NCBI GenBank assembly: GCA_963924565.1
Contig: OZ004610.1
Coordinates: 13,020,001 to 13,084,000, forward strand
Source of the DNA: Ascidiella aspersa
Lineage: Eukaryota
Direction of reading: 5' to 3'
Length of the DNA: 64,000 bases
Positions 16,939 through 19,900 of this stretch are shown here, one piece after another. The notes under the pieces were generated by a model that worked only from the letters and a program-made list of their open reading frames with translations, had not been told where the DNA came from and made no database searches. Each line of letters begins with the position of its first letter. Within the stretch, counting starts at the first letter, position 1. Both the position numbers and the translations under genes were made by a program.

Positions 16939-19900
16939 CTGGTGGTGATGAAACAAGAAAAAATAAATGAATATGATCTAGTAAAAGTGCAAGAGTATTG
17001 GCTGGTTCCAAAAACGTTACAGACTGCTTGGGCATTGGATAACATAAGCTTTAACCTATTTTTACGAGTTTTTTGTAAAGCTTTGATAAAATTAAATGTA
17101 TGCTAATCCCTGCATTGTTGCGCTAAATTAACTTTTGGTAAAAGTGAACCGCTGAGCGCATAAAGTTAATTAATGTGGGTTGCGAAGTAGAAAGAGATTC
17201 ATACTGAAAACATAACATCGATATTTATTCCTTGGGCATAAAGTTATACCAGCACAATATACGCAAAGCAATAGCTCTTCGTCGAATGTGCAAAAGAAAA
17301 TGTATTTAATTTTTTTTTCGGATTAACTTTAAAAAGTTCAACCCACCTGTGCACATCTTCTTTGTAGCTGTGGTTGCTGGTGGTAACCGGCGAAAGGCTC
17401 TGATGACGTGCGCCCATCAGCGACGTCAGATTGGAAACAGCCTCGGCCGGATCGATGGACATCGAAGCGTCCGAGGACAGGCTGTGGGAAATTCCCCCGA
17501 ACCCACCGGGAACAAAACCCCCGTAGTTGGAAAGGGGATTGGAACCGAACATCGCTTGGGAGGCGAGCTGTGCTGCGTCACCGAATGACATCTGAAATTA
17601 AAACAAAATTTTCTTTTTTAAAACTCGAAACAAAAAATTGGAAACTGCGATAAACTTGAATATAAAGTTAGTCGTTCAAATACAGAAGGAATGTTCTAAG
17701 ACCATATGTCGACACAGGCCGCGCATTTATATTGTAAAAGTCAATTATGTAACTCGTTCAAAAACACCAACAGAACACCAGTGTGTACTATACGCCACTG
17801 TTTACAATTGCGTTCCGAATTAGCTTTTGTTTCGGCAGTACTACTAAGTTACAAAACAAAGATGTTTAGGTCCTAATTTTTTTTGCTAAAAAGTGCATCC
17901 ATTTGAACAGTCGAAGCAAAACGTTTACAATGACTTACCTGCATGCCAGCAAGGTTCATCGGCGCACCATAGAATCCCTGGTTGGAACTTGAGTCAATGC
18001 GATTCCGAATCGAGGGACTACTGCATGAAAAATATAATTTAGCATCACTTTACCCTTCACATAGCGACAGTTAGCAACATGTTAAAAGCAAATCGTTACC
18101 AACACACACAAGCAACAAGCAGCATGCATAAAAGCAGGATTAGGGCGTGCAGAAAGAGAAAGGAGCATGCAGAAAGCCAACGCAGCCGAAGCCAAGCAAC
18201 AACTATTTGAAAACAGAAGCCTGGTATGGCAATTAGGCCTTCAAGCTTTGGTTGTTTTTCGCGTCAAATTAAACGAGATTTGTCGACCGGTGAGTGGTGC
18301 TTTGTTGTACATAAATCGGGCACAAAGGGAGAGAAGAGGGACAGATCTGATTCGAGGCAGTAGTACTAGCGTTGTGTATAGTAACGTGCTGGAGCGTAAT
18401 CCGTAGTGTGGGACAAAAGAAGGAGGCAAGACGAGGAGGTTTCTATAGACATTATAATTAGGAATGTACACGTGTTGTGGCACGTGTGGTGCGAGGTGGA
18501 GTATAAAGGTCAGTCGGTGCCGGTCGCAAATTTCGTGTCCGACGGATGCTTACTGGGCACGGGCCGCGAGGGCCGCATCCCGTTCGTTGTACTTGCGTGG
18601 TCGTCCGCGCTTCAGATGTCGGCCCTTGCGGAACTCGCGGTCGTCCACGGTCCAGTAGGAGCCCATTACGTCCTCGCACCGCTTAAAGCACTTATGCAGC
18701 GACAGGTTGGTGCGAATGGCGCTCTGCGGGCGATACCAAACAAGAAATTTGCATTGGGTTTCTAACTGCGCGCGTGAAGCCCTAGCACGTGGGCCTGTGT
18801 GCAACGAATCGTCAAGAGCAGCTTAACCTTTCCTCTAGTCCTGTTGTCAATACTGTTTTATAACTGGTTAATGATACCACCATTTATTGTAAATATTACT
18901 GTTTTCAGGTAGTCTAAGAAATACACTATTTACATGTTTTGTTTAGGTTAGCCTCTAATTTTTTTTTTCATAAACAGTCCGTCCAAATGCATTAAGTATT
19001 TGGTGGTAGCACAAACCGATCATATTTTGACAGAACTCAACGGCCCTCCCGACGCGTTTGATTAAACTTCGCCTTAAGCCAAGACAAAGCGTGGCGTGCG
19101 GGCGCTAAATTTTTGCGTTGTGCGTGTTCGGATCAAGTGCAGGCGCGTCGCAACTGCATCAGCGTGTGTCGTCATAGCTTTACAGGCTGCGCGTGTCATA
19201 CCAGGACCGTTTGGTTGACGGTGTAAGTAAATATGGCAAGAAGCACACCAAAAGCAAAAGCATGGCGGCGCCGCAAGGGCGTCGAAAAACAAAATAAACT
19301 AAAAACACACGACGCACTAAATGTAATAGTAGTATAGTAGTATAGTTAAAGGTGGCAGAGAAACCATTCGAGCAGCACGAGCAGAGAAACCAGGTTGCAA
19401 CAAACATAAAAAAACAGAAGCGGTGTAGCACAGCCCGTCGCTAGAGCGGGGGAGGGCATACCCTGAGAACTTTTGCGGCCGTCGCTTCTGGTACTCGCTC
19501 TCGTCCACCGTCCAAACCGCTCCCTTAACATTTTCGACCCGCACAAAGCACTTGTGCAGGCTGAGATTGTGCCGGACGGCGTTCTATACATAGAGAGGAT
19601 GCAGTTTCGTCATCATTGTCAAGGCACGCACGCGGACCTTGCTGGTCGGAACATTTTCGCTAACATTTTGTTCATCACCCATACCTAGTGGAGGCTATAA
19701 CTAATACCGGTTTCCACGCTTAATCGCTTTCCTTTTTAGCTGACGGTGAAAATATAGTGTAATGTTTCAAGCCTAAAGTTTCTCTGCCGCTTCGGATAAA
19801 TACGAAAGGTAATTAAAACTCCCCTTTTGAACCTACCGCATTTAGGCAAAATCTGTATTCGCTTTGTTAATTAATAAACCTGTTGAATTTGGATAATGGA

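What the first reader, a model, noticed from the sequence alone, without database searches (positions are those of the whole stretch)
18590..18625. Exon B adds an AT-hook (KRGRPRK) to the forkhead wing
Seen: after WTVDD, exon B encodes [12 protein letters not shown] where exon A has QKRRPQK. Known: K/R-R-G-R-P-R-K is the HMGA-type AT-hook core that binds the minor groove of AT-rich DNA. Inference: isoform B trades major-groove N/H contacts for a minor-groove AT-hook, which could explain a shift toward AT-rich sites. It could also act as an NLS.
Basis: partly seen in the sequence, partly recalled or inferred. Interest (0 to 1): 0.75.

Follow-up and report, generated by a model that had tools for sequence, protein, structure and literature searches.

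The report
Conserved AT-hook motif in FoxP exon B
The alternative second-half exon of this animal's single FoxP transcription-factor gene ends in a short basic motif identical to the core of a classic minor-groove "AT-hook", and the same motif marks this alternative exon in animals from worms and insects to primates, which suggests an untested way in which the splice form changes how the protein holds DNA.

Summary
On the minus strand, 18589-18624 encodes [12 protein letters not shown].

The stretch lies in exon B (18554-18723) of a single-copy FoxP gene. Exon B is the known mutually exclusive partner of exon A (19462-19583; Santos 2010).

The motif is not special to this genome. Of 101 exon-B-type representatives with a complete tail, 95 carry RGRPRK, against 0 of 53 exon-A types. 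Named carriers include amphioxus, a gecko, a primate, a nemertean, crustaceans and insects. A related metagenome contig shows 14 synonymous and 1 non-synonymous codon differences in exon B, four of them silent inside the hook.

Pfam AT_hook finds the stretch but below its cut-off, 15.8 against 17.4 bits.

Minor-groove binding is plausible and unproven. A preference for AT-rich sites has no support; a review of the mammalian isoform reports CGATACAA. RNA support for exon B here is thin.

I found no paper linking FoxP to an AT-hook. The scan's notes hold only first-reader notes on this same window, none on other DNA.

The parts
18592..18612 (-). AT-hook-type heptad K-R-G-R-P-R-K (residues 38-44 of exon B)
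   Evidence: Translation. Pfam AT_hook PF02178 matches residues 38-46 at 15.8 bits, E 0.012, under the cut-off of 17.4. The R-G-R-P-R-K columns are each at least 90% conserved in an alignment of 105 exon-B-type proteins.
18554..18723 (-). Exon B (170 nt): alternative second half of the forkhead domain plus a basic tail. Acceptor ...cgcccgcag|AGC, donor CA|GTAAGC. The donor overlaps an in-frame TAA that ends the frame if it is not spliced.
   Evidence: Sequence. Pfam Forkhead E 1.2e-4 over residues 2-30. A related contig L003 keeps both splice sites and shows 14 synonymous and 1 non-synonymous codon differences. About two RNA reads cover it and no junction reached the 3-read listing threshold.
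19462..19583 (-). Exon A (122 nt): canonical second half of the forkhead domain ([13 protein letters not shown]...QKRRPQKFS), donor GG|GTATGC, same phase as exon B.
   Evidence: Sequence. Pfam Forkhead E 2.8e-8. The junction 19951|19583 is seen in 4 RNA reads. 16 synonymous and 0 non-synonymous differences against L003.
19951..20052 (-). Upstream constitutive forkhead exon ([34 protein letters not shown]), ending in phase 0.
   Evidence: Sequence. Pfam Forkhead E 2.6e-8. RNA junctions leave 19951. Loose read ends at 20054 run on into the upstream ...YASLIRQ exon near 23057-23224.
17939..18020 (-). Common downstream exon (82 nt). Its first base completes the split codon of exon A (GG+T) or exon B (CA+T), and it then reads [27 protein letters not shown].
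   Evidence: RNA junctions 18020|19951 (7 reads) and 17591|17939 (7 reads), both with GT..AG ends on the minus strand. Sequence.
17347..17591 (-). Next downstream coding exon ([20 protein letters not shown]...).
   Evidence: RNA junctions 17591|17939 (7 reads) and 16938|17347 (3 reads). Open frame.

Best explanation
The stretch is the C-terminal end of exon B, the alternative and presumably mutually exclusive exon for the second half of the forkhead domain in this animal's single FoxP gene.

Exon B rebuilds helix 3 without two base-reading residues (N550 to S, H554 to T). Directly after the last forkhead element it carries an ancient, strongly constrained R-G-R-P-R-K motif.

The most likely reading is a single AT-hook-type arm at the wing-2 position. 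While helix 3 sits in the major groove, the extended RGRP segment lies in the adjacent narrow minor groove of the flank of the forkhead site. This would add affinity and shape readout that offset the lost base contacts. The same basic patch probably also helps nuclear import.

Shown here: the sequence, the exon anatomy, the single-copy status, purifying selection, conservation across bilaterian phyla that is specific to the B exon, and identity to a crystallised hook core.

Inferred: disorder of the segment, minor-groove insertion, any A/T preference, and any role in import.
For: 1. Sequence: KRGRPRK at 18592-18612 (-).

2. The Pfam AT_hook model aligns to exactly this stretch in the window (15.8 bits) and in 8 of 10 orthologues scanned at E up to 10 (9.9-16.8 bits). 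At E up to 0.1 it matched 13 of 105 exon-B-type proteins and 0 of 44 exon-A-type proteins.

3. Conservation. A phmmer search with exon B against 1.84 billion representatives gave 509 hits at E up to 0.001, of which 150 were listed. Among those 150, 101 exon-B-type tails were complete. Of these, 95 have RGRPRK, 97 have RGRP[KR][KR] and 99 have RGRP. None of 53 exon-A-type tails has RGRPRK.

4. In the MAFFT alignment A1 (105 sequences), R, G, R, P, R and K are each at least 90% conserved, like helix 3. Conservation stops right after the following Y.

5. G and P are as fixed as the arginines (102 and 100 of 104). Only 11 of 102 tails fit the classical import pattern K[KR]x[KR]. A plain basic import signal therefore does not explain the pattern.

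6. Named carriers span Branchiostoma, Gekko, Saguinus, Tubulanus, Tigriopus, Pollicipes, Hyalella and many insects.

7. Purifying selection in this lineage. Against the related contig L003 only the two exons align (about 87%). Exon B has 14 synonymous and 1 non-synonymous codon differences. Four of the synonymous ones lie inside KRGRPRK.

8. RGRPRK is part of HMGA1 hook 1, which has been solved in the minor groove of AATT DNA (PMC11526092 passages).

9. In forkhead proteins the residues after the last strand (wing 2), often consecutive R/K, contact the minor groove or backbone of the flanks of the site (PMC12458081 abstract and passages).

10. AT-hooks often accompany major-groove domains (start of the abstract of PMC11354804).
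Against: - The Pfam score is below the gathering cut-off in the window and in every orthologue I scanned.
- No structure exists of an exon-B-type forkhead. All 7 matching PDB sequences are exon-A type and end before the motif.
- The structure predictor was closed, so neither disorder nor the direction of the tail relative to DNA was checked.
- The published specificity of the mammalian counterpart, seen second-hand only, moves to CGATACAA, which is not richer in A/T. I could not learn whether that construct included the motif, because Gabut 2011 is not held.
- A single hook binds weakly on its own: micromolar Kd for the HMGA1 hook 1 peptide.
- Exon B use in this organism rests on about two RNA reads, with no junction at the listing threshold.
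- Exceptions exist among orthologues: RGRPSS in Physella, RGKTKH in P0098, and SRGI... in P0006, P0008 and P0102.
Confidence: 0.5

Rival explanations
1. The motif is chiefly a nuclear localisation signal, or part of one. It replaces the basic KRRPQK patch of exon A and has no specific role on DNA.
For: FOXP2 is reported to carry two import signals in or at the forkhead domain, one of them C-terminal (passages of PMC5931254 and PMC5126810). Exon B replaces the basic tail of exon A at the same place. In the window K-R-G-R fits the classical K[KR]x[KR] pattern.
Against: Only 11 of 102 exon-B tails fit that pattern. Most read S-R-G-R-P-R-K. Import signals tolerate K/R swaps and do not need G or P, yet G and P are about as fixed as W and D of the fold. 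The two roles do not exclude each other.
Confidence: 0.22
2. The motif is a generic wing-2 basic arm. It clamps the phosphate backbone by charge alone, with no minor-groove insertion and no A/T or shape preference.
For: Most Fox proteins whose wing 2 touches DNA do so at the backbone (PMC12458081 passages). The Pfam hook score is sub-threshold. The reported FOXP1-ES core motif is not richer in A/T.
Against: A purely electrostatic arm would not need an invariant G-R-P. The exact hexapeptide matches a hook that was seen inside the minor groove.
Confidence: 0.18
3. The motif is a docking or modification site that regulates the isoform through partners rather than through DNA. Candidates are arginine methylation at RGR, or a kinase-controlled switch at the S/T that precedes it in most species.
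For: 81 of 102 exon-B tails have R-x-x-[S/T] directly before RGRP, which looks like a basophilic kinase site. That label is recalled consensus and comes from no call.
Against: The window itself has K, not S/T, at that place, yet keeps the full RGRPRK. So the conserved element is the hook, not the S/T. No partner or modification data were found.
Confidence: 0.07
4. Exon B is a decaying or unused duplicate in this genome and the motif has no function here.
For: RNA run X4 (about 6 in 100 of the run read) gave no exon-B junction with 3 or more reads. It gave 4 reads for exon 6 to exon A and 7 reads that skip both exons.
Against: The frame is open and both splice sites are intact and in the same phase as exon A. 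14 synonymous and 1 non-synonymous differences against L003, with unalignable introns around. About two reads lie on exon B while the bins on either side are empty.
Confidence: 0.03

Closest known systems
FoxP isoform B / FOXP1-ES (Drosophila FoxP exon 7B, mammalian FOXP1 exon 18b/16b)
   Same: It has the same gene architecture: a tandem alternative exon for the second half of the forkhead domain, in the same phase. It has the same H554T change (T in 96 of 97 exon-B helices) and the same RHxxRGRPRK tail. Santos 2010 describes the exon pair across Bilateria. The ES-cell role and the altered motif are known to me only via review passages.
   Different: The window has S at position 550, where most invertebrates have N and the vertebrate-type sequences have G. 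It has K rather than S directly before the hook. Neither Santos 2010 (a term search found 0 hits for AT-hook or minor groove) nor the passages I read on exon 18b mention the motif.
HMGA1 AT-hook 1 (KRGRGRPRK; PDB 8CPG as named in PMC11526092)
   Same: It shares the identical hexapeptide RGRPRK, preceded by K-R. [quoted passage not shown]
   Different: HMGA proteins are fully disordered and carry three hooks that act together. Here there is a single hook tethered to a folded major-groove domain. Pfam scores it below the cut-off.
Forkhead wing 2 contacts (e.g. yeast Fkh1 R400/R401)
   Same: Basic residues just after the last strand of the fold reach the minor groove of the 5' flank and tune flank preference.
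   Different: The Fkh1 wing 2 is a structured loop held by helices H5 and H6. It has no GRP core and is not switched by splicing.
Transcription factors that pair an AT-hook with a major-groove domain (catalogued in the 2024 review PMC11354804)
   Same: The architecture and presumed logic are the same: a hook beside a sequence-specific domain.
   Different: The main text of that review names no Fox protein. 'fox' occurs once, in a reference title. Its supplementary table could not be seen.

Membership tests
AT-hook motif (Pfam PF02178) | G-R-P core with R before it (RGRP) | tested here: met
   K-R-G-R-P-R-K at 18592-18612 (-). The RGRP core is named as conserved in PMC11526092.
AT-hook motif (Pfam PF02178) | Basic residues (K/R) on both sides of the core | tested here: met
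   K-R comes before and R-K after the G-R-P.
AT-hook motif (Pfam PF02178) | Profile score at or above the curated gathering cut-off (17.4 bits) | tested here: not met
   15.8 bits, E 0.012. Orthologues score 9.9-16.8 bits in 8 of 10, with no match in 2 of 10. 13 of 105 match at E up to 0.1. The model has 13 positions, so a single hook has little room to score.
AT-hook motif (Pfam PF02178) | Lies in an extended, unfolded segment outside a globular domain | tested here: inconclusive
   The Pfam Forkhead match ends at exon-B residue 30. Solved FOXP chains align only up to residue 35-38. Conservation collapses right after the motif. The structure predictor was closed.
AT-hook motif (Pfam PF02178) | [quoted passage not shown] | not testable with these tools
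   This needs binding assays or a complex structure.
FoxP alternative exon B (exon 7B / 18b class) | A second tandem exon for the C-terminal half of the forkhead domain, downstream of exon A and in the same phase | tested here: met
   Exon A is 122 nt and exon B 170 nt; both leave 2 bases over. Both start after a phase-0 exon and both complete a codon with the first base of exon 8.
FoxP alternative exon B (exon 7B / 18b class) | His554 replaced by Thr in helix 3 | tested here: met
   [11 protein letters not shown] against [11 protein letters not shown]. The feature is described in Santos 2010, section 19.
FoxP alternative exon B (exon 7B / 18b class) | Spliced in a mutually exclusive way with exon A in RNA | tested here: inconclusive
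   Run X4 gave 4 reads for exon 6 to exon A and 7 reads for exon 6 to exon 8 skipping both. No exon-B junction had 3 or more reads, and about 2 reads lie on exon B. Only about 6 in 100 of the run was read.
FoxP alternative exon B (exon 7B / 18b class) | One FoxP gene per invertebrate genome | tested here: met
   A six-frame search of the own genome (308.6 Mb) finds only exon B itself and exon A.

The most novel reading that the evidence does not exclude
Since the bilaterian ancestor, alternative splicing of FoxP may toggle the protein between two ways of reading DNA. Isoform A reads bases in the major groove through N550 and H554. Isoform B gives up those contacts and gains a true AT-hook that reads minor-groove shape beside the site. 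If so, the conserved hook, and not only the helix-3 changes, would underlie the different target sets of FoxP-B in insect brains and of FOXP1-ES in mammalian pluripotent cells. In most lineages an S/T next to the hook could let a kinase switch it off.
Probability: 0.3. Interest if true: 0.75.

Novelty: new member of a known kind. Interest (0 to 1): 0.55.

Why it matters
The exon A/B switch of FoxP/FOXP1 is tied to operant learning in flies and to pluripotency in mammals. Its effect on DNA binding has been explained only by the helix-3 substitutions (Santos 2010, section 19; review passages).

A hook-type motif is as conserved as the fold itself and is present only in the B exon. It gives a concrete second mechanism that is cheap to test, and a clean separation-of-function mutation (GRP). 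It would add a forkhead protein to the list of factors that pair a major-groove domain with an AT-hook.

It also warns that domain constructs cut at the usual forkhead boundary would miss the motif.

Tried and rejected
1. Structure.

One related contig came instead from the search for related loci.

3. Solved structures. The whole exon B finds only exon-A-type FOXP1-4 chains that stop before the motif. The 29-residue tail alone gives one meaningless match, Spire, E 0.053. Hook peptides under 20 residues are not in that library.

4. Primary source for FOXP1-ES specificity. Gabut 2011 is not held by PubMed id or by DOI.

5. Literature on a FoxP AT-hook. I ran five searches:
   - 'AT-hook'/'forkhead'/'FoxP'/'minor groove';
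   - 'FOXP1-ES'/'exon 18b'/'AT-hook'...;
   - 'RGRPRK' anywhere: 28 papers, 24 listed, none on Fox proteins by title;
   - 'AT-hook'+'FOXP1': 95 papers, 40 listed, with co-occurrence through HMGA2 and the like by title;
   - 'AT-hook'+'FoxP'+'Drosophila'+'forkhead': 26 papers, 25 listed, none a FoxP study by title.
   I judged these listings by title and abstract start only.

6. I rejected the idea that the motif is lineage-specific (my first guess).

7. I rejected pseudo-exon decay.

8. Sub-threshold DUF7075 matches in 21 of 105 proteins overlap the strand-to-hook region. I took them as noise.

9. The organism stayed coded (organism A) and I did not try to name it.

10. Supplementary files (Santos 2010 Table S1; the AT-hook review's Table S1) were not opened. 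They may list exon-B sequences or hook-bearing proteins that bear on the novelty claim.

11. The spliced protein was never joined. Each exon was searched apart: exon B, and the other exons only.
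Full report
**What is there**

The finding lies on the minus strand. Reverse-complementing 18480-18780 and listing ORFs shows an open frame. It reads ...[57 protein letters not shown] and ends in a stop. Translating 18589-18624 (-) gives [12 protein letters not shown] exactly. The heptad KRGRPRK is at 18592-18612.

**Gene context**

A three-frame read of 16000-27000 (-), together with the sequence around the exons, gives a FoxP gene with these parts:
- an exon ending ...[12 protein letters not shown], near 23057-23224;
- a forkhead exon at 19951-20052 ([34 protein letters not shown]), ending in phase 0;
- exon A at 19462-19583 ([40 protein letters not shown] + GG, donor GG|GTATGC);
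- exon B at 18554-18723 (acceptor ...cgcccgcag|AGC, donor CA|GTAAGC);
- downstream exons.

A FOXP-type zinc-finger motif (CKWPGC) lies far upstream at about 44672 (-). Pfam finds Forkhead in the 19951-20052 exon, in exon A and in exon B (E 2.6e-8, 2.8e-8 and 1.2e-4).

Exons A and B are 122 and 170 nt long. Both leave two bases over, so either one keeps the frame and both together would not. A six-frame search of the whole assembly (308.6 Mb, 75 contigs) with exon B finds only exon B itself and exon A. The gene is therefore single-copy with two alternative half-domain exons.

This is the arrangement that Santos et al. 2010 described for FoxP across Bilateria. I read its abstract and outline, sections 15 and 19, and ran a term search. 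Each exon was searched on its own.

**RNA**

One RNA run of the same coded species (X4, about 6 in 100 of it read, 51 reads laid) and one DNA-like contig set (X1) were laid on 16300-20200. All RNA reads have the first mate on the + strand, as expected for a minus-strand gene in a common stranded library.

Four junctions reached the listing threshold, all with GT..AG ends on the minus strand:
- 19951|19583, exon 6 to exon A: 4 reads;
- 19951|18020, exon 6 to a downstream exon, skipping A and B: 7 reads from 3 starts;
- 17939|17591: 7 reads;
- 17347|16938: 3 reads.

These junctions define an 82-nt exon at 17939-18020 that I had not predicted. Its first base completes GG+T (Gly) after exon A or CA+T (His) after exon B, and it continues SPSIRNRID.... 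This fits mutually exclusive use.

The double-skip form joins ...TGG AAG to TAG and so stops at once, before helix 3.

No junction into or out of exon B reached three reads. Depth over exon B is 0.43 and 1.87 in its two bins, which is about two reads, while the bins on both sides are empty. However, a similar small cluster lies at 19182-19443, where I predict no exon. RNA support for exon B in this sample is therefore weak, and this result counts neither for nor against the motif's function.

**Is exon B alive?**

A metagenome contig of a related species (L003, 91% protein identity) was the only confirmed hit of the one metagenome scan. Blastn between 2.3 kb of the window and this 4-kb contig aligns only the two exons: exon A at 87.2% over 141 nt and exon B at 86.6% over 187 nt. 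The introns do not align. Both splice sites of exon B are kept.

Codon by codon, exon B (codons 1-48) has 14 synonymous and 1 non-synonymous differences (L37M). Exon A (codons 1-40) has 16 and 0. Four of the silent changes fall inside K-R-G-R-P-R-K, at codons 39, 41, 42 and 43. The constraint is therefore on the protein, and exon B is not a decaying copy.

**How general is the motif?**

A phmmer search with the 57-residue exon B against 1.84 billion representative proteins gave 509 hits at E up to 0.001 and 99 at E up to 1e-10. The best 150 were listed.

I sorted these 150 by the strand signature before the conserved Trp:
- 105 exon-B type, one of which (P0121) I later moved to A type;
- 53 exon-A type;
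- 10 models holding both exons;
- 2 unclassified: P0099, a short B-type fragment that does carry KRGRPRKY, and P0111, which is unrelated.

Of the 101 B-type tails with at least 21 residues after the Trp:

| Pattern | B-type tails (of 101) | A-type tails (of 53) |
|---|---|---|
| RGRPRK | 95 | 0 |
| RGRP[KR][KR] | 97 | 0 |
| RGRP | 99 | 0 |
| GRP | 99 | 1 (P0142) |

The six B-type tails without RGRPRK are P0080 and P0086 (RGRPKR), P0090 (RGRPRH), P0117 (RGRPSS, Physella), P0098 (RGKTKH) and P0102 (RGIVIR). Three shorter tails were left out of the count. P0006 and P0008 end in SRGIGQ, and P0107 is a truncated fragment.

In the MAFFT alignment of 105 B-type proteins, R, G, R, P, R and K are each at least 90% conserved, on a par with helix 3 and the Trp-Val-Asp-Asp strand. 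Column counts on a slightly less clean set give 103, 102, 101, 100, 98 and 96 of 104, and conservation collapses two residues later. The residue before the motif varies: S 72, T 9, Q 7, A 6, K 4, N 2 of 100. The K of the window is the minority state.

Names that the sources give place the motif in:
- Branchiostoma;
- a gecko and a tamarin, whose helix 3 starts with G;
- a nemertean (Tubulanus);
- a copepod, a barnacle and an amphipod;
- Diptera, Lepidoptera, Coleoptera, Hymenoptera and Hemiptera.

The pond snail Physella has a degenerate form. Position 554 is T in 96 of 97 B-type helices. Position 550 is N in 86, G in 8 and S in 3.

The motif thus belongs to the exon-B class as a whole and is as old as that class.

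**Is it an AT-hook?**

For:
- The core R-G-R-P with K/R on both sides is present.
- The Pfam AT_hook model aligns to exactly residues 38-46. It aligns to the same place in 8 of 10 orthologues. It never matched among 44 A-type proteins.
- The hexapeptide RGRPRK is part of HMGA1 hook 1, KRGRGRPRK. [quoted passage not shown]
- G and P are as fixed as the arginines, which a charge patch or a classical import signal would not need. Only 11 of 102 tails fit K[KR]x[KR].

Against:
- The Pfam score is under the gathering cut-off everywhere: 15.8 bits here and 9.9-16.8 in orthologues, against 17.4. At E up to 0.1 only 13 of 105 are reported.
- There is a single hook.
- Nothing here tests binding.

**Where it sits**

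The Pfam Forkhead match ends at exon-B residue 30. The seven solved FOXP sequences (FOXP1, 2, 3 and 4) are all exon-A type and align only up to residue 35-38. The motif starts at residue 38.

So it lies just after the fold, at the place of wing 2, and not inside a wing. From recall of the FOXP2 structure paper, which I did not read here, that place follows a short C-terminal helix.

In other forkhead proteins, basic residues at this place reach the minor groove or the backbone of the flank of the site (abstract and passages of PMC12458081). The geometry is therefore plausible. I could not check it, because the structure predictor was closed.

The first half is right for this window. Exon B changes N550 to S and H554 to T, the two residues that Santos 2010 (section 19) names as the only direct base contacts.

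The second half, a shift toward AT-rich sites, has no support. A 2024 review (passages) reports that array data gave GTAAACAA for FOXP1 and CGATACAA for FOXP1-ES. That is 6 against 5 A/T of 8. A hook would act on the flanks, which an 8-mer core does not show. I could not read the primary paper to see whether the construct held the motif.

FOXP2 is said to have two signals in or at the forkhead domain (passages).

**Novelty**

The exon pair is known. I found no paper that links FoxP or FOXP1 exon 18b to an AT-hook:
- Santos 2010 has no occurrence of 'AT-hook', 'AT hook' or 'minor groove'.
- The passages on exon 18b that I read do not mention it.
- Of 28 papers that hold 'RGRPRK', the 24 listed are, by title, on HMGA, CBX2, WhiB7, ORC and others.
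- The joint searches list only chance co-occurrences, judged by title.
- The 2024 catalogue of hook proteins names no Fox protein in its main text.

Supplements and domain databases were not visible, so an existing automatic annotation cannot be excluded.

**Verdict**

The motif is a conserved, selected, isoform-specific element with the sequence of an AT-hook core, at a place from which forkhead proteins are known to touch the minor groove. That it works as a hook is the best reading, at about even odds, and it is cheap to test. It is a new member of a known kind rather than a new kind. The AT-rich-site claim should be dropped until flank-resolved data exist.

Noticed in passing
window 18020|19951 (minus-strand junction): 7 RNA reads (3 starts) join the upstream forkhead exon directly to exon 8, skipping both A and B. 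The join reads AAG|TAG, an immediate stop before helix 3. In this sample the form outnumbers the exon-A junction (4 reads). It may be a truncated isoform or a decay-targeted by-product of the exclusive splicing.
   Followed up: partly
window 19182-19443: Low RNA depth (1.88 and 0.3 in the two bins), about two reads, lies in the intron just downstream of exon A, where no exon is predicted. It could be retention of that intron, as in the intron-retention isoform named in the Drosophila FoxP literature (abstract start of PMC7776582), or noise.
   Followed up: no
exon-B orthologues (P0001-P0117), residue before the hook: 81 of 102 tails read R-x-x-[S/T] directly before RGRP. This is a possible kinase-controlled switch next to the hook. 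The window has K there instead.
   Followed up: partly
window 18550-18555: The exon-B donor CA|GTAAGC overlaps an in-frame TAA, so an unspliced transcript ends one codon after the exon. Many database fragments of exon B from other animals likewise end in ...Q, which suggests the same donor and stop overlap is widespread.
   Followed up: partly
window 19462-19490 (exon A tail): The exon-A tail QKRRPQK can be laid on SRGRPRK of exon B (R-R-P against G-R-P). It may be a degenerate remnant of the same motif, or B may have gained it after the duplication. One A-type protein (P0142) has MGRPSL.
   Followed up: no
P0006, P0008, P0102; P0098; P0117: A few exon-B-type models lack the full hook: SRGI... 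in three related models with LSLYKCF, RGKTKH in one, and RGRPSS in the snail Physella. These could be loss, a different exon boundary or model error; this is not resolved.
   Followed up: no
window 18619: DNA contig set X1 has T>C here, which is CGA to CGG on the coding strand and a silent change in the Arg of GRHL.
   Followed up: yes
window about 44672 (-): A FOXP-type zinc-finger motif (…GVCKWPGC…) lies here, so the gene spans at least 28 kb of the window.
   Followed up: no
alignment A1 members: Pfam DUF7075 (PF23272) gives sub-threshold matches (best E 0.0037, cut-off 23 bits) in 21 of 105 exon-B-type proteins, over the strand-to-hook stretch. This is probably noise.
   Followed up: partly
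window 18040-18200: Another first-reader note (s1-802299) reports RBFOX- and MBNL-type motifs in the intron between exon B and exon 8. MBNL1 is the main repressor of mammalian FOXP1 exon 18b (passages of PMC8189919).
   Followed up: no
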